64,000 nt of DNA from IMGVR_UViG_3300017987_000001:1-64000, one strand, 5' to 3'; positions 5,852 to 22,795 are shown, counted from the stretch's first letter. Translations and numbers: made by a program. The notes: generated by a model from the letters alone, not told the origin.

Positions 5852-5878
5852 AGGGCTTTCCAGTCCTCCTGTAAGGGC

Positions 5879-6133
5879 CTACAGACGACTCAAGGCATCA
5901 CCAACGTTCGCGGCACGCGTGTCCGCACGCGCGCGAGCATCGCGAAAGTCGGCAACCGTTGCGCGATGACGGCAGTTGACGCACTTGCAGCTCGCGTCGA
6001 TGTCGATGGTCACGTTCTGGTACTCGTAGACCGAGCCATTATCCAAGTACAGCTGGGCATGACCCTCGACCAAGAAGCGCCGGTTGTGCCCACACTTGGG
6101 GCACTGCAGGCGCGGCAGACTGTTGAGATCCAT
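5879..6133 (-). CDS. zinc-ribbon protein with C-terminal GDALSRL motif
   Basis: CPKC...CVNC; GAGAGGA SD. Confidence 0.7.
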   Translation of the reverse strand: MDLNSLPRLQCPKCGHNRRFLVEGHAQLYLDNGSVYEYQNVTIDIDASCKCVNCRHRATVADFRDARARADTRAANVGDALSRL

Positions 6134-6143
6134 CAGAGTCCTC

Positions 6144-7193
6144 TCAGCTTGTGATACCCATCTCGTTCTTGACTGCTGCAAGTTCCTCCGCTGCGTCTGC
6201 CGCGCGAAGGGTTCGCAGAAGGAACGAGTACAGCTCCGGTGTCTCTTCACGATTCACCACGCGCCCAAGGCACTGCTCAAGCCCAACCTCGAACTCCGTG
6301 GGTTTGTCGAGCTTGGCATCATCCCTCAGTACGGGCAGGTCGCGGATGCGCAAGTGCACGCTTCGCTCTCGACATGCGTCGCCAAGCCGCTTGTATGCCT
6401 CCGGCACGTCCGGGGACACGCGCGCGAGCATCAACGAATCGACAGCCAGCTCGGTTTCGATCAGCTCGACGGTGGCGTCGAGCGTCTCGGGACTATCGAT
6501 GGTCATGATGCTCGTAGGCCGCCCGTGAATCTTGTGCCGCTTGACGGTCATCTTCTTGCCCGAGTGGTGAACGGAGATGAACGACTTCTGCGGATTCTCC
6601 TTCATCGAGCGAATGTGCGTCGATCCGGAATAGTGGCACTTACCCACGGACGCTTCCACGTGGAGATCGCCAAGCAAAGCGACCTTCACGAAGTCCGGGA
6701 TCCACTCCTCGTCCAGATTCCAAGCACCTTCGATCGACATCACCGACTTCAGCGCCTGATGAAGCATGAGAATGTCGCACTCCTTCAGGGCTTCGAGCTT
6801 CTGCTTCACGTCGTCGGCATGCGTATTGTCGAAGCCGTAGAGCAGGTGATCCTTCCCGTCGAAGTTGAGCGTGATCGGATCGTACCCATCGATCGAACTG
6901 ACCTCCGGCACCAGCTCGAACCACGGAGGGCTGCTGCGATCGTGCTGTCCTTGAATCGCGAGCTTCCGTGTCTTCTTCGGGAGCCGTCCGATCTCGTCCT
7001 TGAATGTCCTAACCGACAAGCTATCCGGCTTGCTCTTGTCGAAGATATCGCCGCCGAGCAGGAGCGCCTCTGCCTTGTTCTTCAGGCAGTAATCGATGAT
7101 CTGATGAAGCGCGTTATACGCGTCGCCGCGCATGTCCGGCAGCTCTGCCCAGATCGTCGGCGACAGGTGGAGGTCGGCAGCGAAGGCGATCAT
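6144..7193 (-). CDS. sbcD: SbcD/Mre11-like metallophosphoesterase nuclease (gp47-like)
   Basis: ADLH, GDIFD, GQHD, LHQ, LGDLH, YSGS motifs; near sbcC. Confidence 0.9.
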   Translation of the reverse strand: MIAFAADLHLSPTIWAELPDMRGDAYNALHQIIDYCLKNKAEALLLGGDIFDKSKPDSLSVRTFKDEIGRLPKKTRKLAIQGQHDRSSPPWFELVPEVSSIDGYDPITLNFDGKDHLLYGFDNTHADDVKQKLEALKECDILMLHQALKSVMSIEGAWNLDEEWIPDFVKVALLGDLHVEASVGKCHYSGSTHIRSMKENPQKSFISVHHSGKKMTVKRHKIHGRPTSIMTIDSPETLDATVELIETELAVDSLMLARVSPDVPEAYKRLGDACRERSVHLRIRDLPVLRDDAKLDKPTEFEVGLEQCLGRVVNREETPELYSFLLRTLRAADAAEELAAVKNEMGITS

Positions 7194-7513
7194 TTCTGAA
7201 ATCCCGACTGATCGTTCTTGGCTACCTCCTCAGCCCGTACTGCGCCGATGGCGTGTCCCACCATGACGCTGTGTGCGTGAATGATGAACGCCGCACACTT
7301 GTCATTGTCTGCCCCGACGGACATGTTCTTCAAGTACGTCTCGACCTCGCGCTTCACCTCGCTGAGGCAGGAGGCGCAGAACTCCAACTCCTCCACATGC
7401 TTGATGTCCTTCTCGTCGTCGAGCAACCTCCCGCAGGAGTCGCACCGCGTAACGGTGACCTTCACCTTCAATACATCTCCTTTCAGTCCAACTTCGCCAG
7501 TCGCCGTCGGCAT
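7190..7513 (-). CDS. hypothetical zinc-binding protein
   Basis: CDSC...CASC; ATGA coupling to sbcD. Confidence 0.6.
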   Translation of the reverse strand: MPTATGEVGLKGDVLKVKVTVTRCDSCGRLLDDEKDIKHVEELEFCASCLSEVKREVETYLKNMSVGADNDKCAAFIIHAHSVMVGHAIGAVRAEEVAKNDQSGFQK

Positions 7514-7686
7514 GTGTCACATACCGCCATCTCGTCGGTGTCAGAGACCTCGACCAGCTCGTAGCAGTATTCACACATGACCCGAATACGGAAGCGACTT
7601 CGTTTTCTCGGTCGCATTTCAAGGGGAATCCGGAACCGACGGCTGGTTTTCAGTTCCGGATCCATCTCTTTCGTGAAGACCGCCAT
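7483..7686 (-). CDS. small zinc-ribbon protein
   Basis: CEYC...CDTC; TGATG coupling. Confidence 0.55.
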   Translation of the reverse strand: MAVFTKEMDPELKTSRRFRIPLEMRPRKRSRFRIRVMCEYCYELVEVSDTDEMAVCDTCRRRLAKLD

Positions 7687-8612
7687 CAGCGAGCCACCAG
7701 CCTCTGGGTTCGCTTACCCGGCGGCGTCTTCACAAGCTTGCGTCCGGCGCGGAAGGCATTCCAGCAGCCGATGCACACGTTGTACATGACTTCGGCTGGA
7801 ACCTGCGTCTTGTTGTTCGAGGCTCCGCGAGAGCCGAGAACCGTTCGATGCAGGTAGTCGGAGAGCACCTTCGCCGGATCGCTCTTGCTGCTGAACAATC
7901 CCTCGATGAGGGTGTTCCAGAACTCGATAGCTTTAGTCTTTGCCGCCTTGACCGTCTCCATCATTGCGGCAACGACCGGGCTGCGCCGCAGGTGATATGC
8001 CTGCTGCGCGTTCAGGTACGCGAGCAACTCCGCCACGGCTCGCCCGATCTCGGGGAACTCGAAGCGCAACGCTTCGTGGACCTTGTCGGCCTTCACACGT
8101 TCGTTGTGGAACTTCCAGTACTTCGCGCCTGCGCAGAGGTACTGGATGACCGACTTCTTGATTCCTTCGTACTCGGGCGTGTCGAACAGCGCCATCTTCG
8201 CGAGATGCGCCGCCGTCCGCACACGGTTCCGGTCGAAGTTCTTGTACAGCTGGCGATACTCGTCCTCGGTGTCGACCCGATACTTCACCACTCGGATCGA
8301 TGGTTGGTACTTCGGGATTTCGAGGTACGACCTCGCCCAGCTGATGTGTTGACCGTTCAGCTTCCGTGCCTTCTTGTCCCATCCACACACGGCGATGGAC
8401 ATAACGGCCTGAGCGGCAAGGAACTGTCCGGTCTCCATGGCGCGCACGAGCGTTCCGACATGCTCGTCGCTGACCTCACGCTCGATGTCACGGAACTCTT
8501 CCAGCGACAGGTAGTAGTCCGCAAGCATCTTGGTGAATGGCTTCCGTTTATCCGATACGATTCGGCTTATCCAATCGATCGGAGCGCCCGGAGCCGCCTG
8601 CTTCTTCGCCAA
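7686..8612 (-). CDS. ParB/DGQHR-like N-terminal domain protein
   Basis: R..V..L..AM..G.F...NGQH motif resembling the ParB/Srx DGQHR core. Confidence 0.55.
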   Translation of the reverse strand: MAKKQAAPGAPIDWISRIVSDKRKPFTKMLADYYLSLEEFRDIEREVSDEHVGTLVRAMETGQFLAAQAVMSIAVCGWDKKARKLNGQHISWARSYLEIPKYQPSIRVVKYRVDTEDEYRQLYKNFDRNRVRTAAHLAKMALFDTPEYEGIKKSVIQYLCAGAKYWKFHNERVKADKVHEALRFEFPEIGRAVAELLAYLNAQQAYHLRRSPVVAAMMETVKAAKTKAIEFWNTLIEGLFSSKSDPAKVLSDYLHRTVLGSRGASNNKTQVPAEVMYNVCIGCWNAFRAGRKLVKTPPGKRTQRLVAR

Positions 8613-8615
8613 GAA

Positions 8616-9728
8616 TCACCACCCCTCTTTCGTTCTGGCGTCGTTGCGATGCGCGAATATGTAGAAGCCGGTTTGCGCCCCGGCCATAACAAGGATGAAG
8701 ACAATGTACGTCCATCCCGGCGGCTCTACGCTGAGATAGTCGAACTTGTCCCAGTCCTTGATGATGTAGTTCGCCCGCACCTCCTTCTCGATCACCGGGA
8801 TCATGCCAGCCTCCAACGGCATGTCCCGAAGGAGCATTTCGAGATTGCGCTTCACGATCTCCTGCTCGGTCCAGCCGAACACGTAGACCCATTCGGGAAC
8901 CTGTCCAGCGAGTCCGGCCACGCAGATGACGAGGTCGTTCTTCTTACCGCCCAACCACTTCGCCTCCTGCTGCTGCCCGACGAACGAGTCGGTACCGGGT
9001 TCGAACCCGGCCATGACTACGTTCACCTTCTTCACAGGACCAAGCCGCGCGTTCATCTGATCCCACTTGTAGAGATCAACGGCACGCGCCGTACCCAGCA
9101 AGCGGCCTGAGCGCCAGATACTTGGGTTCCCCGGATAGTCATATACGGGCGCGTCTTCCGGAACTGCAGCGAACTTGAATACGCTCGGCGACGCCTGCAC
9201 CCGGTTCGTCCACCGTTTGGTAGTCGTGACGGGAATAACGTGTCCACTCTTGTTGCGGATCACATAGATGTTTGGATCGCCGCGTACCAGTCCGGACTTC
9301 CACGCCTTGGTCTTGACGGGCGCGCAATCGAACTTCTTGGAGAAGTCGTTGAATTGCGACTTGGAGATCCGGCAACCCATCATGAACCCAAGCGTGGTCC
9401 TGCACGTCCAGTGCTCTGAGTGCTCCCGATATCGCACAACGATGCGTGTGTGCGTTCTGCGGTTCTTTCCCGATCCGGTGGTGTACGTCTCGGTAGTCGT
9501 ATACCGCTCCTTCCACCACGGGTGGAACGTAGCTTGGGTCACGCGGCCCGACCATGTCTCAATATCGGACGTCATCGACGTCGCGATGGTGACATGGAAG
9601 GTAATGGCCAGCACGAAGCCGATCCCAGCTCCGGCCAGCCATTCCCACCACGTGACCTCTTTGTCCTTCACCCACAGGATCGCGCCCGCGACCACGGGGA
9701 TGAAGGCGAAGAGATAGAAGAACCACAT
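8616..9728 (-). CDS. membrane protein (2 N-terminal and 1 C-terminal TM)
   Basis: Hydrophobic termini, large extracytoplasmic loop; paired with the upstream LemA-like gene. Confidence 0.75.
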   Translation of the reverse strand: MWFFYLFAFIPVVAGAILWVKDKEVTWWEWLAGAGIGFVLAITFHVTIATSMTSDIETWSGRVTQATFHPWWKERYTTTETYTTGSGKNRRTHTRIVVRYREHSEHWTCRTTLGFMMGCRISKSQFNDFSKKFDCAPVKTKAWKSGLVRGDPNIYVIRNKSGHVIPVTTTKRWTNRVQASPSVFKFAAVPEDAPVYDYPGNPSIWRSGRLLGTARAVDLYKWDQMNARLGPVKKVNVVMAGFEPGTDSFVGQQQEAKWLGGKKNDLVICVAGLAGQVPEWVYVFGWTEQEIVKRNLEMLLRDMPLEAGMIPVIEKEVRANYIIKDWDKFDYLSVEPPGWTYIVFILVMAGAQTGFYIFAHRNDARTKEGW

Positions 9729-9731
9729 ACG

Positions 9732-10280
9732 CTACTCGAACAGGTCCACGTCGTCGTCGACGCCCGTCTCCATGGCCTTCTTGGCCCTCGTCGACGATAC
9801 GACGGTGATCTCGATCTCTGGACGCCCGCCGACGATCAGCGATGAAGGGAAGATCGTGCGCAGCGTATCGTGTTCGCGCTTGAGGTCGATCAGCTCCTTC
9901 TGCCGCATGGTCCAGCGGTCGCGCGCGGCCGTGACGATCGCCATCAGCTTCTCATATGTCTTGAGATCCTGATTCGGGATCGCTTCGTGCAGTGCGCTGA
10001 CGAGGCCGCCTTCCTTGACGCCGCCCCGCGCCTCCGCGTAGCCGGTGACGAGTTCGAGCGTCTTCTCGGCCTGTCGGTCCGTGATCTGGGCGGTCTGCTT
10101 GATCTTCTTCATCATGTTGTCCAGCTCGGACTCGTTGTCCATCACCTTGGCCTCGATGGCCCGCCTGAGGCGCACCTCCGCGTTGCTGGTACCGACCCAC
10201 CAGCTCAGCAGGATGATAAGGAACAGTACGACACAGCCGCCAATTGCCGTAGGGATGACCCACTTAGGGAGTTCGTTCAT
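9732..10280 (-). CDS. LemA-like membrane-anchored coiled-coil protein
   Basis: N-terminal TM, helical body, EAIPN..L and FPSS motifs; GAAGGAG SD. Confidence 0.6.
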   Translation of the reverse strand: MNELPKWVIPTAIGGCVVLFLIILLSWWVGTSNAEVRLRRAIEAKVMDNESELDNMMKKIKQTAQITDRQAEKTLELVTGYAEARGGVKEGGLVSALHEAIPNQDLKTYEKLMAIVTAARDRWTMRQKELIDLKREHDTLRTIFPSSLIVGGRPEIEITVVSSTRAKKAMETGVDDDVDLFE

Positions 10281-10358
10281 CGTCTCCTTCTTCCGATCCT
10301 TCCGACGAAGCGAACCCCGCCTCGCCGGTATCGCCCGTGAAACGACCGGGACAAACAA

Positions 10359-11441
10359 TCAGGCATTCTCTTCTTCCGCCATCATTTCGGAGCAGCTTTC
10401 GCAGAGGTTGTCTATGTTGAGGTCGTTCACGTTGAACTCGCCTCCGCACTCGCTGCACGTATCGAACTCCGCCGCACAATCCTCGCAGCGGTTGTTCCAG
10501 TCGAGACTGTCCACGTGCGTTTCGTCGCCACACTCCGCGCAGGGGCGGAAGTTTGCTTCGCAGTTCTCGCAGCGTCCGGAGGCGTTGAGTTCATCGGCGG
10601 GGAATGTGTTCCCGCAGTGCTCGCACTCCTCAGGCGCTTCGCAGTTCTCGCAGTAGCCGTCGTCGAGATCGTCGTCGCTGTGCCACGTGCCGCAGCCTTC
10701 GCAGCGTGACATGTAGTTGTCCCGACAATCCTCGCAGTAGCCGTCTTCGAGTTCGTCTTGGGTACGCGCAGAAGAGCAGCGATCGCAGAATACGCGGCAG
10801 CTCTCGCACAGCTCGTCGTCAAGCTCATCCGGCTCGAACATACCCTCGCACTCACGGCACGGGATCAATTCGTCCTCGTCGTCATCCGCGTCTTCTCCGG
10901 CCGAATCCCCGGATGTCTGGATGCGGATGTCGTTCAGGTTCAGGCCGTGTTCGAGACCACCCGTGCCATTCGTGCAAATGCAACGAAGCGTCGCCACCGG
11001 CAGTTGCACCGTGCGTAGTTCGATTTCCTCATCGAGGTGGAGATCGATTTCGAATGCGAGATACGCCACGTCGGCGACGGCGCGCATCGTATCGATATTG
11101 AGCCGGAACATGCTCAGCAACGCGAACTGTTCCGGCGAGAAGTGCACGAAGACGAATTCCGTGCCGTCGTGCAGCCTGTCGATGACCCCACTGGTCAGGT
11201 GCTTCCACATGTGCTCTGGAATCACCATGGCGTCGGGGTATGGATTGACCACAGATTCTGCCTCCGACAGATCTCCGACGTCGAAGTCCTCGAAGTCGAG
11301 AACCGCTGCGTCGCCCGTGAGTGCATCGACGGCATTCATGATCGGGCGCATACGGTCGGCCTCCAGATTGATCAGCGCGTAGAGTCTACTCGTGCCGTAC
11401 CACAGCATCGTAGCACAACCGAGAAATGGCTCGTTCGACAT
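10359..11441 (-). CDS. protein with C-terminal tandem acidic CxxC zinc-ribbon repeats
   Basis: About six units of CxxC-(11-13)-CExC. Confidence 0.75.
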   Translation of the reverse strand: MSNEPFLGCATMLWYGTSRLYALINLEADRMRPIMNAVDALTGDAAVLDFEDFDVGDLSEAESVVNPYPDAMVIPEHMWKHLTSGVIDRLHDGTEFVFVHFSPEQFALLSMFRLNIDTMRAVADVAYLAFEIDLHLDEEIELRTVQLPVATLRCICTNGTGGLEHGLNLNDIRIQTSGDSAGEDADDDEDELIPCRECEGMFEPDELDDELCESCRVFCDRCSSARTQDELEDGYCEDCRDNYMSRCEGCGTWHSDDDLDDGYCENCEAPEECEHCGNTFPADELNASGRCENCEANFRPCAECGDETHVDSLDWNNRCEDCAAEFDTCSECGGEFNVNDLNIDNLCESCSEMMAEEENA

Positions 11442-11451
11442 GATGTCCTTT

Positions 11452-12747
11452 CTAGCCTACTGAGAGTCCTTGCTCCAGCTCACGGTACCACTGCACCACG
11501 TCCGGATCGGCCTCTACGGCGTTTGCCGTGACCGGACGTACCAGCGACAAGCCGTCGAGCGTCTTGACGCGAGATAGCGCAACGTACACGTGACCCGGAC
11601 TGAAGCATTCCGATACGTCGCAGCGCATGGCGCTCAGCGTCATGCCTTGAGACTTGTGGATTGTGATAGCCCACGCGAGTTTCAGCGGGAACTGCTCCAT
11701 CGCAGCAACTTCCTTGTGCTGATGGTTGTACAAGCCCCACCGCTCGGGTTCGACGAATACGATCTCGCCGGTGTCCTTCTTAACCGTGATGGTGTCATCT
11801 GCCAGTTCCTCTATGACACCCCTCTCGCCATTGATGAACAGAGTCTCGACTGGCGGACCGTATTCGTACTTGTTCCGCGCGAACAGCACCGGAGCGCCCG
11901 GCTTCAGCCGAAGCTTGTCGGGCACGATGCAGTCGCGTGCCAGCTTGCTCCACAGGCGCTGGTCGCCGCTGAACTCGGCTTCGTACAGCTTCGCGGCGCC
12001 GGGCAGCTTCGCAAGCTCGCGGTTGTTGACGGCATCTACTGCCGCATTCTTCGCATACAGCTGGACAGGCAGCTTCAGCGGCGCACCGACGCGCGCGTTG
12101 AAGTAGTCGATGGTCTCGCTGCTGGGATTACCGTATCGGATCCCGTTCAGGTGACGGATGAACTCCTTGTCATCCTGCCTGAAGATCTTCGTCAGATAGA
12201 TGATCTTCGGGTTCAGCTTCTGCCACGACTTTGACGCTGGCGCGTACTCGTCGCGAACGGGCTGATCGTATCGAATCACCGGAGGCAGCTGAAGGAAGTC
12301 GCCGGAGAAGATCACCTGTATCCCTCCGAACGGCTTCTTCGTACCTCCGAGCAGTGTCCTGAGCCACCAGTCCATCATCGTGATGTAGTCCCCGCTGAGC
12401 ATGGAGACCTCGTCGAGGATGATGGTATCGAGAGCGCCGAGCTTCCAAGTCGCGCGATCGAGATTGAGCTTCCCGTGCTTGATCGCGACCTTCAGGTCAT
12501 CGACGCTATTGATGATGTTGGTGCCCAGACACGAGTGGATCGTGCACCCGCCGATGCGAACGGCGGCGATCCCTGTTGACGCGCACACGGCGAAACGTCT
12601 GCCCTGTAGCGTCAGCTCTTCGATGATTCGGTTGATCGTCTCCGACTTGCCGGTGCCCCCGGGACCGGTCAGGAAGATGCTCTCACCGGTCGTCACGCAG
12701 TCGAGTGCCTGTTGCTGCTCGTCACTCAACTGGAATGGCGTCTGCAT
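11452..12747 (-). CDS. Pif1-family SF1B DNA helicase
   Basis: TGPGGTGKS, ILDEVSML, GDFLQLPPV, QFPLKLAWAITIHKSQGMTL, YVALSR. Confidence 0.95.
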   Translation of the reverse strand: MQTPFQLSDEQQQALDCVTTGESIFLTGPGGTGKSETINRIIEELTLQGRRFAVCASTGIAAVRIGGCTIHSCLGTNIINSVDDLKVAIKHGKLNLDRATWKLGALDTIILDEVSMLSGDYITMMDWWLRTLLGGTKKPFGGIQVIFSGDFLQLPPVIRYDQPVRDEYAPASKSWQKLNPKIIYLTKIFRQDDKEFIRHLNGIRYGNPSSETIDYFNARVGAPLKLPVQLYAKNAAVDAVNNRELAKLPGAAKLYEAEFSGDQRLWSKLARDCIVPDKLRLKPGAPVLFARNKYEYGPPVETLFINGERGVIEELADDTITVKKDTGEIVFVEPERWGLYNHQHKEVAAMEQFPLKLAWAITIHKSQGMTLSAMRCDVSECFSPGHVYVALSRVKTLDGLSLVRPVTANAVEADPDVVQWYRELEQGLSVG

Positions 12748-15362: not shown

Positions 15363-15549
15363 TCCTGTCCAATCTGTCCAGCGCGTCGCCGAGATCTTTC
15401 GACTCCTCTCGCTTGGTACTCTTTGCGGGTTCAGCCCACGCCCACTGAACGCCACAACTCGGGCAGTAGTTCCCGATCTGCATGTAGGCGTAGCCGGGGC
15501 GCTTAACCAACGCGCCACAGTGTCCGCAACGGCCTAGTGAGAACCGCAT
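15292..15549 (-). CDS. zinc-ribbon protein with GDALDRL motif
   Basis: CGHC...CPSC; AAGGAG SD. Confidence 0.6.
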   Translation of the reverse strand: MRFSLGRCGHCGALVKRPGYAYMQIGNYCPSCGVQWAWAEPAKSTKREESKDLGDALDRLDRNGSSSKGRQGLPNPQDRRQVCAS

Positions 15550-15550
15550 A

Positions 15551-16018
15551 TTACTCCTTCAGACTGAAGGCGACGACGGTGTTCTTCAGGATCTTCTTCA
15601 GCTGCGCGGAGATGCCCTTCTTCTCCGCCAGCTCCTCGATCGACTTCATGATGTTTCCGTCGTTGTGGCGCTCCGATGCCGCCTTGCAGTCGGCGAGGAA
15701 CTCCACGAGATCGATGAGGTTCATGTCATCGATACCGTTCTCGAAGTGCTCCGGATGATGCCGGTTACGCGCGTAGTGGTGCGCGAGAGCGTCGCCCAGA
15801 GCCTCCACCTTCTGCTGCTCATACTCTGGCGTGCCGAACGTCATCGCGTTCAGCTTCTCCGTGTTCGCTTCGAACTTCTCGCGCTCCGGCGATTCGAGCT
15901 TGGTGCTGTCGTGCTCGTTTGCCCGCTTCAGCAGTTCGACAACGAACAGGGTGAGGATTTGCACAACACGAGCCTTGTGCTTCCGCGTCTCACACGTCGG
16001 GCAGAAGTCTTCGCTCAC
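15551..16018 (-). CDS. DUF5662-like (HD-fold-related) protein
   Basis: HD..K, HHY..NRHHPEH, DL.E..AD motifs. Confidence 0.75.
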   Translation of the reverse strand: MSEDFCPTCETRKHKARVVQILTLFVVELLKRANEHDSTKLESPEREKFEANTEKLNAMTFGTPEYEQQKVEALGDALAHHYARNRHHPEHFENGIDDMNLIDLVEFLADCKAASERHNDGNIMKSIEELAEKKGISAQLKKILKNTVVAFSLKE

Positions 16019-16239
16019 GGCGTACCTCCTAGCTTCTTGATGCGCTCTTCGAGATACTCGGTGACAGCGTCCACGTCCTGTCGAGCAGCGTCGAGCGTAT
16101 CCTTCGCGTTCTCCAGCTCCATCTCCGCATTATCGAGGGCGCTACTCGCACCTTCGACAGCGTCCTTCACTCGCTTCAGCGCACGCTCGGTCTCGACAAT
16201 CGGCTTAGTGCGGCGCTTCCGCTTCTTCTTTTTCGCCAT
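16015..16239 (-). CDS. small coiled-coil protein, basic N-terminus
   Basis: MAKKKKRKRR. Confidence 0.6.
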   Translation of the reverse strand: MAKKKKRKRRTKPIVETERALKRVKDAVEGASSALDNAEMELENAKDTLDAARQDVDAVTEYLEERIKKLGGTP

Positions 16240-16540
16240 CCAGCTCTCCGGGGTCGATCAACCCCATGCCCTCGCTGCACAGGTCGCACAGCTGACTCCA
16301 CCCGGTCATGTAGTGAATCGACCGGTCATCCGGAGCATCCTCCCACGCCTGCTGGAGGATCTTCCAGAGTTCGTACAGCTTGTCGGGCGGCGAGTCGGCC
16401 GGGAGGTTCTTGAACTTGTCGAGCGCATTGCCCGCCGGGGATCCGCTGTAGAAGCGGACGAGCGGACGCACCACGTCGAAATGCTCATTGAAGAACCCGA
16501 TCCAGCCTTCCCGCGTCTGGTACCACTTATCGTTTGACAT
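16205..16540 (-). CDS. hypothetical protein
   Basis: MSNDKW start with GAGGAGG SD. Confidence 0.65.
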   Translation of the reverse strand: MSNDKWYQTREGWIGFFNEHFDVVRPLVRFYSGSPAGNALDKFKNLPADSPPDKLYELWKILQQAWEDAPDDRSIHYMTGWSQLCDLCSEGMGLIDPGELDGEKEEAEAPH

Positions 16541-16574
16541 CCGATCCTCCTCGATTGTTGAACGCGTCCAACTA

Positions 16575-16808
16575 TCAGAGCAGCTCGCTGCACTTGTCGA
16601 CAGCATTATTCAGGCTTCGCAAGCCGTACTCCAATTCGTCGACGCCGTCGTTGAGGCTATCGATGATATCCTCGACATCGCTGACTGCCTCACGCAGCTC
16701 GTCACGCTTCGCTGCGATCTGCTCCTTGAGTTTCTCTATCTTTTCAAGCCGCTGGCTGAGTGCAGCAACCCACGTAGGCTTCTCCGGCTTTACGCGCTTA
16801 GCTGTCAT
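16575..16808 (-). CDS. small coiled-coil protein
   Basis: Operon context, heptads. Confidence 0.6.
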   Translation of the reverse strand: MTAKRVKPEKPTWVAALSQRLEKIEKLKEQIAAKRDELREAVSDVEDIIDSLNDGVDELEYGLRSLNNAVDKCSELL

Positions 16809-17112
16809 CGCATATCACCAGCACTTCCGTTCCGTCCGGCTTGCCGTTGTGGGTCCAGCCAATGCCAACCCACTCGCGCCGCTCGCCGTGCAGCTCGATG
16901 GCGTGCGGAAGCTTGGGGCTATTGCAGACCGAGAGCCGCTTCAGCGTTGCGAACTTGATCGTCTTGCGTTTGCCTTTCCGCTTGGCGGTCTCTTCGTCGA
17001 AGATCTCCTTCTCCAGCTTCTTGATCTCCTGCTCGTGCCGACGGATGTCCGCACGCATCTGCCGAACGGTGCGTTTCTTCGCCTTCTTCTTCGCAACCTT
17101 CTTCTTGGCCAT
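16798..17112 (-). CDS. hypothetical protein, Lys-rich N-terminus
   Basis: MAKKKVAKKKAKK; TGATG coupling. Confidence 0.6.
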   Translation of the reverse strand: MAKKKVAKKKAKKRTVRQMRADIRRHEQEIKKLEKEIFDEETAKRKGKRKTIKFATLKRLSVCNSPKLPHAIELHGERREWVGIGWTHNGKPDGTEVLVICDDS

Positions 17113-17321
17113 CAGGCCCTCGAATTCAGGTTGAGGTTCAGCCACATGTCACCCTGTCCGGGGATCGTGGCAAAGCCGTGCGTCGTGGCGACCGTGATCG
17201 ACCGCCCGTTCTTGGACGGCCCGTGTCGCTCGGTCAGGTTGCACCGAATGATGAGAATGTCATCTTCGATCGTCATCCTGACGTTCGTTGGTGGCTTCTT
17301 TTCCTTCCTCGACTCCGCCAT
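17112..17321 (-). CDS. small conserved-type beta-rich protein
   Basis: GPSKNGRSITVATT.G motif. Confidence 0.6.
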   Translation of the reverse strand: MAESRKEKKPPTNVRMTIEDDILIIRCNLTERHGPSKNGRSITVATTHGFATIPGQGDMWLNLNLNSRA

Positions 17322-18150
17322 ACACGTCCCTTCTGATTCCCTTGTTCGTCTCGATCGCACCAAACATCGTATTCGGCGTGACGCCGATACTGTGTGCGAG
17401 ATCCGCAAACGCAGCCAAATCCTTGGGCAGGCACGCTCCGCCGAATCCGTACTTCCCGTCCGGTCCGGGCACCTGCGTGTGCATCTTGTTGACCCACCCA
17501 CTGGTGAGCATGCCCTGCAACACGCGACCGTAATCGATCTTCAGCGTGTCACACATGAGTGCCACTTCGTTCATGAACGACAGCTTCGTCGCGAAGAACG
17601 AATTGCAGGCACACTTGATCATGGCTGCCTCATCGTGCGAGACGATCAGGATAGGTGTATCCGCCTTGACCATGCTGCGGTAGATCGCCCACAGCGCCAT
17701 CGTCGCGAGCGTCTTGCTGTGCTCGTCGGTTCCGATGACCACGCGCGACGGCTTTGCGAAGTCGTCGCGTGCCGTACGCTGCGTAAGGAACTCGGGGTTC
17801 GAGATGAAGCGCTGCGCCGGGTACCTGCCGCGATACCCCTCCACGACGCCCGGAAGCACCGTGGACTTGATCACGATCGTACCGGGTTCACGCCCCTCTA
17901 CTCGCAGCTTCTGAATCTGCTTAACGACTGAATCGAGGATGACGAAATCCATCGAACCGTCGGAACGGGATGGCGTGGGCACGCAGACGAAGACGAACTC
18001 CTGCGTAGCGGCACGCTCGAAGCTCACCTCCGATCGATCCGGCTTGGCATCGTAGATGTAGGGGGTCAGCCCGTGGCGCGCGAAACCGTGCGCTACTGCA
18101 TCTCCTACGAATCCGTGACCGATGATCCCGATGCCCATCTCCATCTTCAT
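17260..18150 (-). CDS. ugd: UDP-glucose/GDP-mannose 6-dehydrogenase (short phage type)
   Basis: GHGFVG Rossmann, CVPTP, KSTVLPG, NPEFL, K..N.F...K..F.NE, GFGGACLPKD; lacks the C-terminal UDP-binding domain. Confidence 0.92.
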   Translation of the reverse strand: MKMEMGIGIIGHGFVGDAVAHGFARHGLTPYIYDAKPDRSEVSFERAATQEFVFVCVPTPSRSDGSMDFVILDSVVKQIQKLRVEGREPGTIVIKSTVLPGVVEGYRGRYPAQRFISNPEFLTQRTARDDFAKPSRVVIGTDEHSKTLATMALWAIYRSMVKADTPILIVSHDEAAMIKCACNSFFATKLSFMNEVALMCDTLKIDYGRVLQGMLTSGWVNKMHTQVPGPDGKYGFGGACLPKDLAAFADLAHSIGVTPNTMFGAIETNKGIRRDVYGGVEEGKEATNERQDDDRR

Positions 18151-18374
18151 GTACCATCCCCGTTCGTTTCGAGTTCGACCTCATCCACTTCGTGCTCGAT
18201 GTTCAGCCACTCGGCTTCCTCGCCGGTCTCAAGGGCTTCGAGCGCCATCGTGTGCGCGTCGTCCTTGTCGGCAGCCGTGACTGTGATCATTCCGTACGAG
18301 ATGCGACGTACGTACGCAATGTAAGTGTGCTCACTGGCTATGGCTTCTCTCCTTGTGTGCCCTACGACAATCAC
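18147..18374 (-). CDS. small acidic hypothetical protein
   Basis: ATGA coupling to ugd; start uncertain. Confidence 0.45.
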   Translation of the reverse strand: MIVVGHTRREAIASEHTYIAYVRRISYGMITVTAADKDDAHTMALEALETGEEAEWLNIEHEVDEVELETNGDGT

Positions 18375-18567
18375 TGAGCATCACGCGCTTCTCCATCTCG
18401 ATCAGATCCAGATTGATCTCGAAGTACTCGGCGAGGAGCACTTCGATTCGCTCCGGGAGGATCACGCCCTTCTCGCACTGCAACCAGTCGAGGAAGGTTC
18501 CGATCGGCTGCGACTCGGCGTGAACCGCAGCCAGCTTGTCGTGCTCAGGGTAGACTCGCTTTGCCAT
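18331..18567 (-). CDS. hypothetical protein
   Basis: MAKRVYPEHDKL start. Confidence 0.55.
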   Translation of the reverse strand: MAKRVYPEHDKLAAVHAESQPIGTFLDWLQCEKGVILPERIEVLLAEYFEINLDLIEMEKRVMLSDCRRAHKERSHSQ

Positions 18568-18569
18568 TG

Positions 18570-18833
18570 TTATACCTTGAAGATGTGCCAGACGAACGGC
18601 GGGGTGTGTACCGTTCCAAGGTAGTCCCAATCCGCCACTTCGCGCGGCAGTTCCCATCCTGTGCCGATGATCCGAATTTCGATCTCGGTATCCGGGAACT
18701 CGGGGTCGACCAGCGCCCACAGCGTGGGCACGTCATTCTGTGCGTGTACCTTCAGTAGCCGATGCCGGGTGGGGAGCTTGACTTTCTGTACGTCCTCCAC
18801 CGTCAGCGGGTACTTGTAGATCGTCATGGCCAT
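18570..18833 (-). CDS. conserved phage hypothetical protein (DUF7352-like)
   Basis: TIYKYPL...LWALVDP...IIGTG...YLGTV..FVWHIF. Confidence 0.7.
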   Translation of the reverse strand: MAMTIYKYPLTVEDVQKVKLPTRHRLLKVHAQNDVPTLWALVDPEFPDTEIEIRIIGTGWELPREVADWDYLGTVHTPPFVWHIFKV

Positions 18834-18997
18834 ATGTACACCACGTTGGGCTTCTTCATCGCTTCTTCGCCTTCTTCCGTTTCGGCCGCGCCTTCAACTG
18901 CGCGCGCAACTCCCTGTTCTCCTTCTGTAGCTTGCGTATCTTGGCGCGCAGCTCCGGGCAGGTCTGACACGGGCCATAGAGCGATTCGAAGTAACGG

Positions 18998-19396
18998 TCA
19001 ACCCCCACGGCACGCTCCGCATCCGGAGCACGACGGGCCGCCGTATATCTCGCGCATCGCACTCCTTGTAGCAGCCACGACACGCTCATACTCCTCGTCC
19101 GTGATCATGCCCAAGTCGTGCTGCTTGGAGGCATCGATGATCTTCTCGCTGAGTATGTTGACTTCGCGCATCTTGTCGAACGTCTTCGCGGTATTGATCG
19201 CCGAGGCGAGCGTGGAGCGAATCACGAAATAGTGCATGACCGCCCAGAGCGTGATAATGATAAGCTTGTACGCGATATGCCCGGTCGGGTTAGTCGCGTG
19301 ATCTACGACGGCAATCCAGCCGAGTACCGCGAACAGTGTCGGCGCGTACAGCGACCATTTGATCAGCGTATGCATCGGATCGCGTGAAGCACTCAT
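18998..19396 (-). CDS. membrane protein (2 TM, SHOCT-like C-terminus)
   Basis: Two hydrophobic segments; G.ITDEEY motif. Confidence 0.55.
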   Translation of the reverse strand: MSASRDPMHTLIKWSLYAPTLFAVLGWIAVVDHATNPTGHIAYKLIIITLWAVMHYFVIRSTLASAINTAKTFDKMREVNILSEKIIDASKQHDLGMITDEEYERVVAATRSAMREIYGGPSCSGCGACRGG

Positions 19397-19584
19397 GTAC
19401 TCTCCTGAACTTCAACATCTTCGGGGAACACGCCATCGCAGACGAGGCCGCTACCGTGCGTGCCCTCCAAGCGATATGCGAGGCGCTGTGCCCATTTGTC
19501 CGCCTTCTCGCGCGCCGACTCCTCATCCTTTGCTTCGATGGTAAGATCGGCGTGCATCGGTACCTGTACGAGGTACTGCTTCAT
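19393..19584 (-). CDS. small hypothetical protein
   Basis: ATGA coupling at both ends. Confidence 0.55.
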   Translation of the reverse strand: MKQYLVQVPMHADLTIEAKDEESAREKADKWAQRLAYRLEGTHGSGLVCDGVFPEDVEVQEST

Positions 19585-19955
19585 ACTTCCACCTCGCTAC
19601 TCTGTGCTGATTCCGCCAGTCCCGAGCAAACGGCGCGAACGAACGCTGCGACTTCGTCCACGAAGTCCAGCACCTGCTGCGCCGTCTCGAACTTCCGATG
19701 CTGGTAACGAATGCGCGTGCCCGCAACCCAGAAGTGGTGACCGTCCGAGCGCAGGGATTCATACCGTGAGGTCAGCCCCGCCTGCTTTGCGAGGAAATGC
19801 ACGATGCCCGGAATGATGCTCGACGACCCGGTCGACGGCTGCACCTGCAGCACCTTCGGCTCGGGATCGTTCCAGCGCTTCATCTCCACGCGGACGTATT
19901 CGCCACGAACGTACGCGGTCGTGGCTACGGTTGCTTGAGGTTTGTAGGTTCCCAC
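19581..19955 (-). CDS. hypothetical protein
   Basis: GAGGAG SD, GTG start. Confidence 0.55.
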   Translation of the reverse strand: MGTYKPQATVATTAYVRGEYVRVEMKRWNDPEPKVLQVQPSTGSSSIIPGIVHFLAKQAGLTSRYESLRSDGHHFWVAGTRIRYQHRKFETAQQVLDFVDEVAAFVRAVCSGLAESAQSSEVEV

Positions 19956-20596
19956 TCAGGCTCCTCCATGAGTTGGATTGACTCCAACTTCTGTCGGATC
20001 TCAGCAAGCCTGTTGCTTGCTTCCATCCTAGGCTTCTCGATGACCGTGTCAACCATGTCACCGTGCCCCTCTGCTATCAGCTCGCCCTCGTCCTGCACGA
20101 GCTGATCGAGCTTGGTTTGAAGCTGATGGTACTCCTCAGCCAGCTTCATTGCGGTCTGCTTGCCCAAGTGCCTTCCTTTCTTGTCGAATCGTTCGATGGC
20201 CGCGCGCACGTCGGAGTAATCGCCAGAATACTCCTCATATGACACACACCGCTCCGGACGATAGTCCATCCACGGCGCTGCCCTATTGAGCAGTGCTACC
20301 AGCTCTGCAATCTCCTCCTCGCGACGGCCATGCTGATGGCCGCACGCCGACAAGTCACCCTTCAGTTCCTCGATCTCCTGTTCCTGCTCTTCCATGGCTT
20401 TCCGGAGTTCGATAGCCTCGTTGAGCAACTTGACGATGTATTCGGCCTTGCGCTTGTCTTCGTTGAAGTAGCAGTAGACGTAACCGACTTGGCGGTCGTC
20501 CGCATCAACAAGGCACCATCCGTGCCCCTGCACGGGCTTCCGCCACATGCGAATGGGGAACGTGATCTTGTACCCGATGTTCGATAGGTCTTTCAT
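19925..20596 (-). CDS. coiled-coil hypothetical protein
   Basis: 223 aa, ATGA coupling. Confidence 0.65.
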   Translation of the reverse strand: MKDLSNIGYKITFPIRMWRKPVQGHGWCLVDADDRQVGYVYCYFNEDKRKAEYIVKLLNEAIELRKAMEEQEQEIEELKGDLSACGHQHGRREEEIAELVALLNRAAPWMDYRPERCVSYEEYSGDYSDVRAAIERFDKKGRHLGKQTAMKLAEEYHQLQTKLDQLVQDEGELIAEGHGDMVDTVIEKPRMEASNRLAEIRQKLESIQLMEEPEWEPTNLKQP

Positions 20597-20904
20597 GCCA
20601 GTCGATCCAATGCATCGCCGAGCCGTACCACCTGCTTGGGGTTCAGCTTGCGCACCAGCTCGTCGGCGAGCTTGGGGTAGGCGTACCGGATCGCATCGAT
20701 CAGCCCGGGGTGGTGCTCTATATGCTGCAGCTGTGGGTTTTCGAGCGGGACGCTTACCGACTGCGATCGCGAGTTACCCCATCGAGCTACCGCATAGAGG
20801 TAGTTGTAGCTGCCCATGTTGCACGCGTACAGATCGTCATCGCCGTGCATGCCGACGAACTGGCAGTACGTGCAATCATGTTCGTAACGCGGGGCACCCC
20901 TCAT
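20593..20904 (-). CDS. hypothetical protein with C-terminal GDALDRLA motif
   Basis: PRYEHDCTYC.F.G....DLY.C N-terminal domain. Confidence 0.7.
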   Translation of the reverse strand: MRGAPRYEHDCTYCQFVGMHGDDDLYACNMGSYNYLYAVARWGNSRSQSVSVPLENPQLQHIEHHPGLIDAIRYAYPKLADELVRKLNPKQVVRLGDALDRLA

Positions 20905-21185
20905 TTCGCCTTCTTCTTCGCCTTCTTCTTATGCTCCAGCTGCGAGCGAAGCGGCTCGGCCTTCTTGATCAGCTGGTAGACACCGTTGAGATGGATCCAC
21001 AACTCGGGCTTGTTGGACTGCAGTGCATCGCGCATCGCCTGCTTGAACGCGGCGGTCACTGCAACCCACGCCGGGATGTCGCCCTGATACTTCTCGCAGA
21101 CGTCGCAGCGTTGGATCTCATCGCGTTCGAGCGTACTGGAGTAGACCCAGCCGGTTCCTTCACACGCCTTGCACGTGACGCTCAT
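20901..21185 (-). CDS. zinc-ribbon protein with Lys-rich tail
   Basis: CKAC...CDVC; KKKAKKKAK. Confidence 0.65.
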   Translation of the reverse strand: MSVTCKACEGTGWVYSSTLERDEIQRCDVCEKYQGDIPAWVAVTAAFKQAMRDALQSNKPELWIHLNGVYQLIKKAEPLRSQLEHKKKAKKKAK

Positions 21186-21496
21186 TTCAGCCTTTCCAAG
21201 GCATCGCCGAGAACGGTCCTCGCGGCCTTGATCAGCCCGTCCTCCATCATGCGCGAGAGCGGGCCGAGGTAGAACACACGCCGATCGTGCTCGTCGGCGA
21301 AGAACGTGCGCTTCTCGGTCGAGTAGATGTGCCGCAGTTTCGACCCCGGGTGGTAAACGCGCCCGCCGATGCTTACCGGCGAGGGCAATCTTCCCCCGTA
21401 CTTGAGCCGCGTTGCGGTCTTCAGCTCGTACACTGGGGCCATCGAGCTGATGGGGATGAACTTGACGAGCTCATCCCCGCGAATGGTGCTAGCCAT
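21182..21496 (-). CDS. paralog family A member 4, C-terminal GDALERLK
   Basis: GGRLPSP...Y.PG..LRHI.ST..FFADE shared with neighbours. Confidence 0.7.
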   Translation of the reverse strand: MASTIRGDELVKFIPISSMAPVYELKTATRLKYGGRLPSPVSIGGRVYHPGSKLRHIYSTEKRTFFADEHDRRVFYLGPLSRMMEDGLIKAARTVLGDALERLK

Positions 21497-21801
21497 TACG
21501 CAAGCCTTTCCAGCGCATCGCCGAGAATGACGCCTACCTGTTCGAACCGACCAGTCCTGAGCGTGTCTTCGAGCTGCCCGCACAGGAAGCAGCGGCGCTG
21601 CTCCTCGTCTGCGAACACGGTGACGTGCTTCGTCGACGCGATGTGTCGCAATATCACACCCGGCTCGTAGCGACGAGATCCCTCGTTCAGCGGATCGGGC
21701 AGCGTGCCGCCCACGTACATGACCGTTCGCTTCAGCACCCGATACATCGGCGCACCGTCGGGAATGGGTGTACGATTGACACGACAGGTAAGGCTAGACA
21801 T
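21496..21801 (-). CDS. paralog family A member 3, C-terminal GDALERLA
   Basis: GGTLPDP...YEPGVILRHIAST..VFADE. Confidence 0.7.
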   Translation of the reverse strand: MSSLTCRVNRTPIPDGAPMYRVLKRTVMYVGGTLPDPLNEGSRRYEPGVILRHIASTKHVTVFADEEQRRCFLCGQLEDTLRTGRFEQVGVILGDALERLA

Positions 21802-22168
21802 CACGCAACCTTTCCAGCGCGTCCCCGATGATGTACTTGGGGGGTACCGCCTCAAGATAGCCGTCACTGATGAGGGCGCTGATGCCATAATTGTAGGTGA
21901 GGTAGCCGATGCGCCCTACGTCGTACGCGAAGAAGACGTAGATGCCCGTGTAGCCGATGTACCCGATGATGGTTCCCGGGTCGAGGTAGTAGCTGTCAGC
22001 TGCTACCGGTTCGGGCAGGCGCCCGCCGCGCAACGCCCGCAGCGCGCTCAATACCCGGTAGCGCTTCACGTCGCCCGGGACTTCGAGCGTGTCGACATTG
22101 CAGCGCTTATCCGACAAGTCCAGCGGATCGGCGGCTTGCGCAGGTCCGGAACTTGGTGCGATGTCCAT
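21794..22168 (-). CDS. paralog family A member 2, C-terminal GDALERLRDV
   Basis: RCNV..LEV....YRVL...GGRLPEP. Confidence 0.7.
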   Translation of the reverse strand: MDIAPSSGPAQAADPLDLSDKRCNVDTLEVPGDVKRYRVLSALRALRGGRLPEPVAADSYYLDPGTIIGYIGYTGIYVFFAYDVGRIGYLTYNYGISALISDGYLEAVPPKYIIGDALERLRDV

Positions 22169-22497
22169 TACTTCAACCTTTCCAATGCGTCACCAACGAA
22201 GTTTGGCGGATTCACGTGCTTGAGGTGGTTGTAATTCACGAGCGACTCGACGCCGCCCGCCTCGTAGCAGTAGCAGCGGATGCCCGTATTCACGGTCGAG
22301 AAGAAGTGATAGTACCCCGCCGTGCCGAGATAGCGCAGCTTCTCGTCGCGCTTGACGAATATGTAGGTACTGCTCGACGGCAGGGGTAGGAAGCCGTTGG
22401 TGCCCAACCGCATCTCCGTCAGCACTTGAAGCCACGGTGCGTCCTCGTGCACCTCCAGCTCATTGACGTCGCAGCGCAGCGTCGTCAGATCCTGCAT
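22168..22497 (-). CDS. paralog family A member 1, C-terminal GDALERLK
   Basis: RCDVNELEV..DAP..QVL...G.LPLP. Confidence 0.7.
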   Translation of the reverse strand: MQDLTTLRCDVNELEVHEDAPWLQVLTEMRLGTNGFLPLPSSSTYIFVKRDEKLRYLGTAGYYHFFSTVNTGIRCYCYEAGGVESLVNYNHLKHVNPPNFVGDALERLK

Positions 22498-22793: not shown

Positions 22794-22795
22794 GG

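What the first reader, a model, noticed from the sequence alone, without database searches (positions are those of the whole stretch)
5879..22497. Seven small proteins share a C-terminal GDALxRL tag
Seen: 5879-6133 (VGDALSRL*), 15292-15549 (LGDALDRL plus an overlapping tail), 20593-20904 (LGDALDRLA*), 21182-21496 (LGDALERLK*), 21496-21801 (LGDALERLA*), 21794-22168 (IGDALERLRDV*) and 22168-22497 (VGDALERLK*). Four are paralogs, but the other three have unrelated bodies and lie up to 16 kb away. Codons vary synonymously (GGT/GGC/GGG, GAT/GAC, GCC/GCG/GCA, TTG/CTG), pointing to selection on the peptide. Inference: a modular adaptor family with variable target-binding N-terminal domains and a common helical docking tag, analogous to F-box/SOCS-box adaptors. 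The tag could recruit the phage Ubl/E2 or AAA+ machinery or a host protease, or serve as a capsid-packaging signal. Caveat: GAAAGG (E-R) also acts as the SD of the next gene, but that does not explain GDAL.
Basis: partly seen in the sequence, partly recalled or inferred. Interest (0 to 1): 0.78.

Follow-up and report, generated by a model that had tools for sequence, protein, structure and literature searches.

The report
Shared C-terminal peptide tag, jumbo phage
Seven small proteins of an uncultured 208-kb marine/sediment phage, with at least three unrelated body types, all carry the same eight-residue C-terminal helix (hydrophobic-G-D-A-L-x-R-L), which is conserved as a peptide rather than as DNA and most likely docks them all onto one still unknown partner.

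Summary
GDAL.RL occurs seven times in the six-frame translation. All seven copies lie in coding-like minus-strand ORFs at the stated coordinates. About 0.013 copies are expected in the whole proteome.

All nucleotide variation inside the tag is synonymous except at the x position. The flanks are unrelated and there is no RNA structure. Selection therefore acts on the peptide.

I rebuilt 95% of the roughly 207.7-kb circular genome, a jumbo phage that encodes its own multisubunit RNA polymerase. It holds no eighth copy and no degenerate copy. All seven genes lie within one gap-free operon of about 24 kb, alongside PIF1, SbcCD-like and other DNA-metabolism genes.

The four paralogs fold as SH3-like beta-barrels followed by a detached, low-confidence helix, which is the tag. 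Two of the other genes encode zinc ribbons. One is a Cys/His-rich orphan that shares only a 22-residue C-terminal module with the paralogs.

No homologue and no other tagged locus was found in 5.8 billion proteins, 1.84 billion cluster representatives, IMG/VR, JGI metagenomes or GTDB genomes.

Best reading: a tethered amphipathic docking helix for a common partner. The partner is unidentified. Links to the Ubl/E2 system, an AAA+ ATPase or a protease remain untested.

In the four paralogs the E-R codons (GAA-AGG) also serve as the Shine-Dalgarno site of the next gene.

The parts
5879..6133 (-). g5879, 84 aa. CxxC...CxxC zinc-ribbon body, then an R/D/A-rich linker, then tag VGDALSRL directly before the stop (tag codons 5882-5905). 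It lies between the SbcD-like gene (6144-7193) and a 260-aa orphan gene followed by the SbcC-like gene.
   Evidence: sub-threshold zinc-ribbon hits; publicly called gene; coding score +0.46; AF2: beta strands plus helix 60-81
15292..15549 (-). g15292, 85 aa. CxxC...CxxC zinc-ribbon body with tag LGDALDRL at codons 15370-15393. It is followed by a 25-aa tail that overlaps the next gene, whose ATG is at 15362.
   Evidence: not called publicly; non-overlapping part scores as coding; in the overlap the next gene's frame scores as coding
20593..20904 (-). g20593, 103 aa. Cys/His-rich orphan body. Its last 22 residues (helix, NP linker, LGDALDRLA) align with the paralogs. Tag codons 20599-20622. The stop overlaps the ATG of the next gene (ATGA).
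21182..21496 (-). Paralog 1, 104 aa. SH3-like beta-barrel (residues about 18-94) plus tag helix LGDALERLK (tag codons 21188-21211). GGAAAGG lies 5 nt before the next ATG.
21496..21801 (-). Paralog 2, 101 aa (public aa, starting at 21747). Tag LGDALERLA (tag codons 21502-21525).
21794..22168 (-). Paralog 3, 124 aa. Tag IGDALERLRDV (tag codons 21806-21829).
22168..22497 (-). Paralog 4, 109 aa. Tag VGDALERLK (tag codons 22174-22197).
2954..26637 (-). Gap-free minus-strand gene array (probably one operon) that contains all seven tagged genes. It also holds SbcC/SbcD-like, PIF1 helicase, HD_4, DUF5662 and UDP-glucose dehydrogenase genes, plus many orphan genes.
   Evidence: no intergenic gap of 60 nt or more apart from g15292 itself and one caused by a start call; no excess of sigma-70 promoters or terminators

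Best explanation
Phi-G-D-A-L-x-R-L (Phi = V/L/I) is a short linear peptide motif private to this phage. It forms a two-turn amphipathic helix, tethered by a variable linker to the C-terminal end of small proteins with different bodies: four SH3-like beta-barrel paralogs, two zinc ribbons and one Cys/His-rich orphan. All seven are co-transcribed in one early/middle-type operon with DNA-metabolism genes.

Proposed mechanism: the helix docks into one common pocket on a single partner, so a set of diversifying small binding modules is brought to the same machine or place. The hydrophobic face (Phi1, A4/L5, L8) would be buried, while the invariant Gly allows close approach and the invariant Asp and Arg make specific polar contacts.

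Shown:
- selection acts on the peptide;
- the sequence definition is strict;
- the motif is exclusive to seven genes;
- the tag is predicted to be helical and unpacked;
- the bodies are heterogeneous.

Inferred: docking itself, and the existence of a single receptor. The receptor is unknown. Candidates are a phage replication/recombination factor, the phage multisubunit RNA polymerase, a virion component or a host protein.

Secondary point: in the four tandem paralogs the Glu-Arg codons are held as GAA-AGG, so the tag's mRNA also supplies the ribosome-binding site of the next gene.
For: Statistics: 7 observed against 0.013 expected, with 6 of 7 within 0-3 residues of the stop.

Peptide-level selection: 85 synonymous against 14 non-synonymous codon differences, the latter all at x. 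Flanks are at random identity and no RNA structure is predicted.

Strict definition: the seven sites match 7 of 7 defined positions. Nothing else in 197 kb exceeds 5 of 7, and those weaker matches lie in frames with non-coding-like base composition.

Strongest conservation in the family: the paralogs are 30-44% identical overall, yet the tag is their only invariant block.

Bodies differ: there is no BLAST similarity once the tag is removed. The paralog core is SH3/SH3b-like (Foldseek probability 0.98-1.0, VIA Z 6.5). g5879 and g15292 have CxxC pairs and zinc-ribbon hits. Isoelectric points range from 4.7 to 10.0.

Tag conformation: helix 95-103 with pLDDT below 50, next to a core at pLDDT 85-93. 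In g5879 the tag is part of a long terminal helix. Helical hydrophobic moment is about 0.78.

Residues after the tag vary (none, A, K, A, RDV, K, or 25 aa), so recognition does not need the free carboxyl end.
Against: No receptor was found, and no complex prediction could be run.

There are no relatives, so there is no evolutionary replication of the pattern.

There is no expression or protein data. The phage is known only from DNA metagenomes.

g20593 shares 22 C-terminal residues with the paralogs, so part of the sharing could reflect common descent of a C-terminal module rather than a free-standing tag.

AF2 confidence for the tag is low, and the g5879 model is weak (pLDDT 60.7).
Confidence: 0.55

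Rival explanations
1. Virion-loading signal. The tag binds the inside of the procapsid (major capsid protein or scaffold) or another virion part, so that the small proteins are packaged and ejected with the DNA. Known parallels are the T4 capsid targeting sequence and the C-terminal targeting peptides of encapsulin cargo. This is a special case of docking.
For: T4 internal proteins are described as a highly diverse set sharing only a conserved targeting sequence (PMC3012670). The pattern here is the same: diversifying tandem paralogs plus unrelated bodies.

Encapsulin targeting peptides are short and C-terminal, with hydrophobic residues around a Gly and a basic residue near the end. The native T. 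maritima peptide is NTGGDLGIRK (PMC7925596), which loosely resembles GDALERLK.

Protein-language-model neighbours of paralog 1 are small phage proteins, some from HK97 gp10-like or minor-capsid families, at 0.95-0.96. This is a lead only.
Against: All seven genes sit in an operon with DNA-metabolism genes (helicase, SbcCD-like nuclease and others), not among the head genes.

The tag lacks the GSL/LGI core of the encapsulin consensus.

It is C-terminal with no protease site, unlike the T4 sequence.

The language-model hits share fewer than 170 features, and no sequence or fold search supports a connector protein. Fold searches give SH3 instead.
Confidence: 0.17
2. Common descent, not a modular tag. 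All seven genes derive from one ancestor, and the C-terminal helix is simply the slowest-evolving part because it is needed for self-association or for the fold. The bodies have diverged beyond recognition.
For: Four are clear paralogs. g20593 lies next to them and shares a 22-residue C-terminal module. All seven lie within 16.6 kb of one operon. Several carry Cys-rich N-terminal parts.
Against: The zinc-ribbon bodies and the SH3-like barrel are different folds. Linkers upstream of the tag show no similarity in g5879 and g15292. A helix needed for the fold would be expected to pack against the body, but AF2 leaves it unpacked at pLDDT below 50. Seven of seven defined positions are invariant while the bodies have diverged to no detectable similarity, which points to an external constraint.
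Confidence: 0.13
3. Turnover tag. The motif is a degron read by a host or phage protease or unfoldase, which would limit the lifetime of these early proteins.
For: The motif is terminal, exposed and partly hydrophobic, on small proteins co-expressed from one operon.
Against: The residues after the tag vary, and in g15292 25 residues follow it. That does not fit degrons that depend on the free carboxyl end, such as ssrA-type LAA (the degron rule is from general knowledge). Known degrons are rarely defined this strictly at seven positions.
Confidence: 0.08
4. Nucleotide-level signal. The 21-nt element would be a ribosome-binding or translational-coupling site, a promoter, an RNA structure or a recombination joint, and the peptide would be a by-product.
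For: Each tag ends 0-10 nt before the next gene's ATG in 6 of 7 cases. All four paralogs use the rare GAA-AGG codons, giving GGAAAGG 5-8 nt upstream of the ATG. Leu4 is always YTG.
Against: Variation has period three and is synonymous. The GDAL part lies outside any Shine-Dalgarno site. g5879 has its own GGAGGA site 27 nt downstream. The flanks are random and no base pairs are conserved. This reading explains only the E-R codon choice, not the motif.
Confidence: 0.03

Closest known systems
Capsid targeting sequence (CTS) of phage T4 internal proteins (IPI-III, Alt and others)
   Same: A short terminal peptide is the only conserved part of otherwise diverse, fast-evolving small phage proteins, some of them in paralogous sets. 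It acts by docking onto one common partner (PMC3012670).
   Different: The CTS is N-terminal, is followed by a prohead-protease cleavage site, and is shown by experiment to load proteins into the scaffolding core. The tag here is C-terminal, has no recognisable cleavage site, lies in a DNA-metabolism operon, and has no known partner.
Encapsulin cargo targeting peptides (family 1, C-terminal)
   Same: A peptide of about 10 residues on a flexible linker, with hydrophobic residues flanking a Gly and a basic residue near the C-terminus. It is attached to unrelated cargo proteins and binds a pocket on a shell of phage (HK97) ancestry (PMC7925596).
   Different: The consensus DGSLGIGSLKG, with its GSL/LGI core, is absent here. 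Cargo genes sit next to the shell gene. Encapsulin peptides bind in an extended form, whereas this tag is predicted helical.
Hub-docking linear motifs of replication and transcription proteins (beta-clamp-binding QL[SD]LF; the C-terminal clamp-binding tails of T4 gp43, gp33 and gp55), from general knowledge
   Same: Several unrelated proteins of one phage or cell carry the same short, often C-terminal peptide, and it docks in one hydrophobic pocket of a hub. The genes lie among DNA-metabolism genes.
   Different: The sequence does not fit any clamp-binding consensus. No sliding-clamp gene was seen in the annotated 95% of the genome. The motif is defined far more strictly than clamp-binding motifs.
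F-box / SOCS-box substrate adaptors
   Same: The architecture is a variable binding module joined to a constant docking element.
   Different: Those docking elements are folded domains of about 40-50 residues that bind Skp1 or Elongin BC in ubiquitin ligases. Here the element is 8 residues long, no Pfam family matches, and no link to the phage ThiF/JAB/Ubl genes is shown.

Membership tests
T4-type capsid targeting sequence | N-terminal position followed by a prohead-protease cleavage site | tested here: not met
   The tag is C-terminal in all seven. Zero to 3 residues follow it, or 25 in g15292.
T4-type capsid targeting sequence | The tagged proteins are found inside the capsid | not testable with these tools
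   The phage is uncultured and known only from DNA metagenomes.
Encapsulin family-1 targeting peptide | C-terminal peptide on a flexible linker | tested here: met
   variable linkers precede the tag, and the terminus has low pLDDT.
Encapsulin family-1 targeting peptide | GSL / L-G-I core of the consensus (DGSLGIGSLKG) | tested here: not met
   The motif is Phi-GDALxRL. The only resemblance is a loose one to the native T. maritima peptide NTGGDLGIRK.
Encapsulin family-1 targeting peptide | The cargo gene lies next to the shell gene | tested here: not met
   The neighbours are SbcCD-like, PIF1, HD_4 and orphan genes, with no capsid gene among them.
F-box / SOCS-box adaptor | Recognisable F-box or SOCS-box domain | tested here: not met
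   A Pfam scan of all seven at E up to 1 gave no such hit.
Bacterial beta-clamp-binding motif | Consensus QL[SD]LF / QLxLxL | tested here: not met
   Direct comparison of the sequences: the tag has no Gln and different hydrophobic spacing (the consensus is from general knowledge).
C-terminal degron of ssrA type | Defined last residues with a free carboxylate (such as LAA) | tested here: not met
   The last residues differ among the seven: L, A, K, A, V, K and a 25-aa tail.
SH3-like small beta-barrel (bodies of the four paralogs) | Five- to six-stranded barrel that superposes on SH3/SH3b domains | tested here: met
   AF2 core pLDDT is 85-93. Foldseek on PDB gives SH3 domains at probability 0.97-0.99 and TM(target) 0.57-0.71. 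AlphaFold DB gives SH3b at E 8e-3. VIA Z is 6.5 with 66 residues aligned at 2.6 A. The scores are modest, but every top hit has the same fold.
Zinc ribbon (bodies of g5879 and g15292) | Two CxxC knuckles | tested here: met
   CPKC...CVNC in g5879 and CGHC...CPSC in g15292. The Pfam zinc-ribbon hits fall below the curated cut-offs.

The most novel reading that the evidence does not exclude
The tag is an address label private to this phage. It would load a set of small, diversifying SH3-like and zinc-ribbon effectors into the procapsid, much as a C-terminal encapsulin targeting peptide works on an HK97-type shell. Alternatively it would load them onto the RNA polymerase, if that enzyme is packaged in the virion. 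Either way they would be co-injected as a first-wave host-takeover or anti-defence cargo. That would be a phage counterpart of encapsulin cargo loading and a C-terminal analogue of the T4 targeting sequence.
Probability: 0.12. Interest if true: 0.8.

Novelty: new variant of a known kind. Interest (0 to 1): 0.5.

Why it matters
Short shared docking peptides are how phages address many different proteins to one place. The T4 capsid targeting sequence is one example and clamp-binding tails are another. Few such codes are known, and those few were found by experiment.

This tag was found from sequence alone and is unusually clean. Seven of seven defined positions are invariant, only synonymous change occurs in them, it sits on at least three different body types, and it occurs nowhere else in the genome.

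If the partner were found, it would identify a hub of infection in a lineage of RNA-polymerase-encoding jumbo phages that has no cultured member. It would also assign a role to seven orphan genes and provide an 8-residue portable tag.

Its weaknesses are that it is private to one uncultured phage and cannot yet be tested in a host.

Tried and rejected
1. Pfam and PHROGs scans of the seven proteins and of 20 neighbours gave only sub-threshold zinc-ribbon hits.

2. Homologue searches with the paralog profile, against 5.8 billion proteins and then exhaustively against 1.84 billion representatives, returned only the phage's own proteins. One extra hit, P0005, is a spurious tandem-repeat protein.

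3. DNA pattern scans for GDALERL (GAA-AGG codons; preceded by a hydrophobic codon in the last two scans) covered IMG/VR, JGI metagenomes and GTDB genomes. Only the source contig has several copies. The 7, 76 and 43 other loci each have one copy. In the first two sets these show no C-terminal bias; the 43 GTDB loci were not checked for position.

4. Distant relatives were reached through the primase-like protein (29-39% identity) and PIF1 (32-41%). None has the tag or any recurrent terminal motif within 10 kb either side. In one relative, SbcD and SbcC are adjacent with no gene between them.

5. Population variation: the public runs hold only identical fragments and no RNA run was found.

6. 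There is no conserved RNA structure and no excess of sigma-70 promoters or terminators. A k-mer search of intergenic gaps for phage promoters was swamped by tRNA genes and abandoned.

7. The genes just downstream of the tagged genes, which might have encoded a shared receptor, are unrelated to each other.

8. ESM Atlas on g20593 gave nothing above noise.

9. PDB sequence searches with the tail and with the profile gave nothing.

Full report
**What is there.**
A six-frame search finds GDAL.RL seven times in the window. A hydrophobic residue (V, L or I) always precedes the motif, so it reads Phi-G-D-A-L-x-R-L, with x = E in four copies, D in two and S in one.

In six proteins, 0-3 residues follow the motif. 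In 15292-15549, 25 residues follow it. From the amino-acid composition of the phage, 0.013 copies are expected in the whole proteome. Counting the paralog array as a single event, the probability of four or more independent copies is about 1e-9. The degenerate DNA pattern gave 6 matches in the window against 0 in 100 shuffles.

**Peptide or DNA?**
Inside the 21 nt of the tag, every third codon position varies except that of Leu4. The only first-position changes are the synonymous ones in Leu (Y) and Arg (M). Pairwise there are 85 synonymous and 14 non-synonymous codon differences, and all the non-synonymous ones are at x.

The 21 nt on either side are at random identity (0.33 and 0.27), against 0.72 in the tag. 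RNAalifold predicts no conserved pair. The element is therefore conserved as a peptide, and a DNA repeat, promoter or RNA structure does not explain it.

One nucleotide-level overlay is real. GAA is 28% of Glu codons and AGG is 8% of Arg codons in this genome, yet all four E-R tags use GAA-AGG. This gives GGAAAGG 5-8 nt before the ATG of the next gene.

**Are the genes real?**
All seven ORFs score as coding in frame (+0.26 to +0.76 bits per codon) and as non-coding in the other two frames. Public gene calls include six of them.

The ORF 15292-15549 is not called publicly. It fills an otherwise empty 188-nt gap and has two CxxC pairs, and its non-overlapping part looks coding. In its 25-residue tail, however, it is the next gene's frame that looks coding. 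The tail is therefore probably an unselected read-on where a stop codon is missing. The next gene's ATG lies 7 nt after the tag, much as in the other copies.

**The bodies.**
The four tandem genes at 21182-22497 are paralogs, 30-44% identical, and the tag is their only invariant block. With the tag removed, the other three proteins match neither the paralogs nor each other.

A profile comparison of the paralogs with 20593-20904 aligns only the last 22 residues, as helix, N/P-P linker and tag. That protein therefore shares a longer C-terminal module but not a body.

AlphaFold2 on paralog 1, using the four-sequence alignment, gives mean pLDDT 75.9. The model has a beta core (blocks at 81-93) followed by helix 95-103, which is the tag, at pLDDT below 50. 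Every top structural match of the core is an SH3 or SH3b domain:
- Foldseek on PDB: probability 0.97-0.99, TM(target) 0.57-0.71;
- AlphaFold DB: SH3b at E 8e-3;
- BFVD: phage orphan proteins and KTSC-type fusions;
- VIA-align: Z 6.5, with 66 residues aligned at 2.6 A.

The scores are modest but unanimous.

g5879 and g15292 each have two CxxC knuckles and sub-threshold zinc-ribbon hits. A single-sequence model of g5879 (pLDDT 60.7) shows short strands and then one long helix, residues 60-81, that includes the tag. As a helix the tag is strongly amphipathic, with a hydrophobic moment of about 0.78. The isoelectric points of the seven proteins range from 4.7 to 10.0.

**The genome and the census.**
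The window is positions 1-64000 of IMGVR_UViG_3300017987_000001 (207,857 bp). The same genome appears in JGI, ENA and Logan assemblies from sediment and seawater. The assemblies start at different points, and the IMG/VR contig has a 123-nt terminal overlap. Together these indicate a circle of about 207.7 kb.

I walked outward with 12 fetched loci and rebuilt 197,078 bp, which is 94.9% of the genome, with at most one mismatch per overlap. There is no eighth tag. A position-by-position scan of ORF tails gives 7 of 7 defined positions for the seven sites and at most 5 of 7 elsewhere. Those weaker matches lie in frames with non-coding-like base composition.

In an earlier scan of the 128 kb assembled by then, using a crude gene set that dropped several tagged genes, no other N- or C-terminal motif was shared by three or more genes.

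All seven genes lie in one gap-free minus-strand array, window 26637 down to 2954. The array also carries SbcC/SbcD-like, PIF1, HD_4, DUF5662 and UDP-glucose dehydrogenase genes.

Elsewhere the phage encodes:
- DnaB, a primase-like protein and PolA fused to UDG;
- NAD salvage genes and many tRNAs;
- a ThiF/JAB/Ubl cluster;
- tail sheath and fibre genes;
- beta/beta'-like subunits of a multisubunit RNA polymerase.

The phage RNA polymerase fits the lack of sigma-70 promoters in the tag region.

**Relatives.**
None carries the tag. The paralog profile finds only the phage's own proteins in 5.8 billion proteins and in an exhaustive search of 1.84 billion representatives. The single extra hit is a spurious tandem-repeat protein.

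Pattern scans for the GDALERL coding sequence (preceded by a hydrophobic codon in the last two scans) covered IMG/VR, JGI metagenomes and GTDB genomes. Several copies occur only in the source contig. The other loci have single copies, in numbers near the chance expectation. Those from IMG/VR and the metagenomes show no preference for C-termini.

Distant jumbo-phage relatives, reached through the primase-like protein and PIF1, show no tag and no terminal motif of their own in the 20-kb loci. In one of them SbcD and SbcC are adjacent. g5879 and the 260-aa gene after it therefore look like a lineage-specific insertion. The public runs hold only identical DNA, and no RNA run was found.

**Interpretation.**
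The data fit a tethered docking helix. It is strictly defined, exposed, attached by variable linkers to small binding-type modules of different folds, and indifferent to what follows it. The last point argues against recognition of a free carboxyl end. I give this reading 0.55.

The partner is not identified. The genomic context (one operon with recombination and helicase genes, a phage-encoded RNA polymerase) favours a replication, recombination or transcription hub or a host target. That preference is inference only.

The main rival, at 0.17, is a special case of docking: loading into the virion, as with the T4 capsid targeting sequence or encapsulin targeting peptides. In its favour are the T4-like pattern of diversifying paralogs with one constant tag, a loose likeness to the T. 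maritima peptide, and language-model neighbours among small virion proteins. Against it are the gene context and the missing consensus core.

The other rivals are common descent with an oligomerisation helix (0.13), a degron (0.08) and a purely nucleotide-level signal (0.03).

Its proposed links to Ubl/E2, AAA+ or a protease have no evidence for or against.

**Limits.**
No complex prediction was available. No relatives exist for covariation analysis. There is no expression or virion data. About 10.7 kb of the genome was not read. The g5879 model and the tag parts of both models are low confidence. The SH3 assignment rests on modest scores.

Noticed in passing
outside the window: IMG/VR contig about 127628-129490 and 135427-140142 (L117:10742-12604 and L117:90-4805): Two large genes match PHROG families of RNA polymerase beta/beta' subunits (E 5e-56 to 6e-66 for the best families). 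The phage therefore encodes its own multisubunit RNA polymerase, like the phiKZ and AR9 groups. Whether it also forms a phage nucleus was not checked.
   Followed up: partly
window 327-2155 and further left of window position 1: Six tRNA genes lie in the window (Met, Trp, Ser x3, Lys). tRNA-like T-arm k-mers dominate at least 14 intergenic gaps elsewhere in the genome, so the tRNA set is large.
   Followed up: partly
window 28763-34193: A cluster holds a ThiF-type E1 (about 29403-30170), a protein with a JAB domain (30136-32124) and a ThiS/MoaD-like protein (33738-34193). The last ends in ...DGDRVTISPHKVAG followed by 8 more residues, which suggests a Ubl that needs C-terminal trimming. I found no link to the tag.
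   Followed up: no
window 46470-48188 and 34105-35637: One protein combines Ro60/TROVE-like and vWA domains. A second has a DUF2201 vWA-like domain. Both are unusual in phages. vWA MIDAS sites bind acidic residues of ligands, so they are speculative candidates for reading the invariant Asp of the tag.
   Followed up: no
window 15785-15796 and 6144-7193: The DUF5662 protein has an internal LGDALAHH, and the SbcD-like protein has an internal RLGDACRER. Both are partial look-alikes of the tag inside larger proteins and are probably chance.
   Followed up: partly
window 20901-21185: The one gene inside the tagged cluster that lacks the tag is a 94-aa CxxC...CxxC protein ending in a lysine-rich tail (KKKAKKKAK).
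   Followed up: no
left of window position 1 (L015/L017): An NAD salvage set (NAD synthase, nicotinamidase-type isochorismatase, NAPRTase) lies next to the tRNA region. Further left come HNH, an NrdD fragment, ResIII, DnaB, a primase-like gene and PolA with a fused UDG domain.
   Followed up: no
IMG/VR contig ends: The 207,857-bp IMG/VR contig and the 207,878-bp JGI contig are the same circle started at different points. The IMG/VR record repeats about 123 nt at its two ends.
   Followed up: yes
L021:388-591: In a distant relative (IMGVR_UViG_3300024348_000001), a small ORF ends in ...VTTLVGDGE and a nearby reading frame ends in ...VTTLIGDDA. The second is not a convincing ORF, so this is probably not an analogous tag.
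   Followed up: partly
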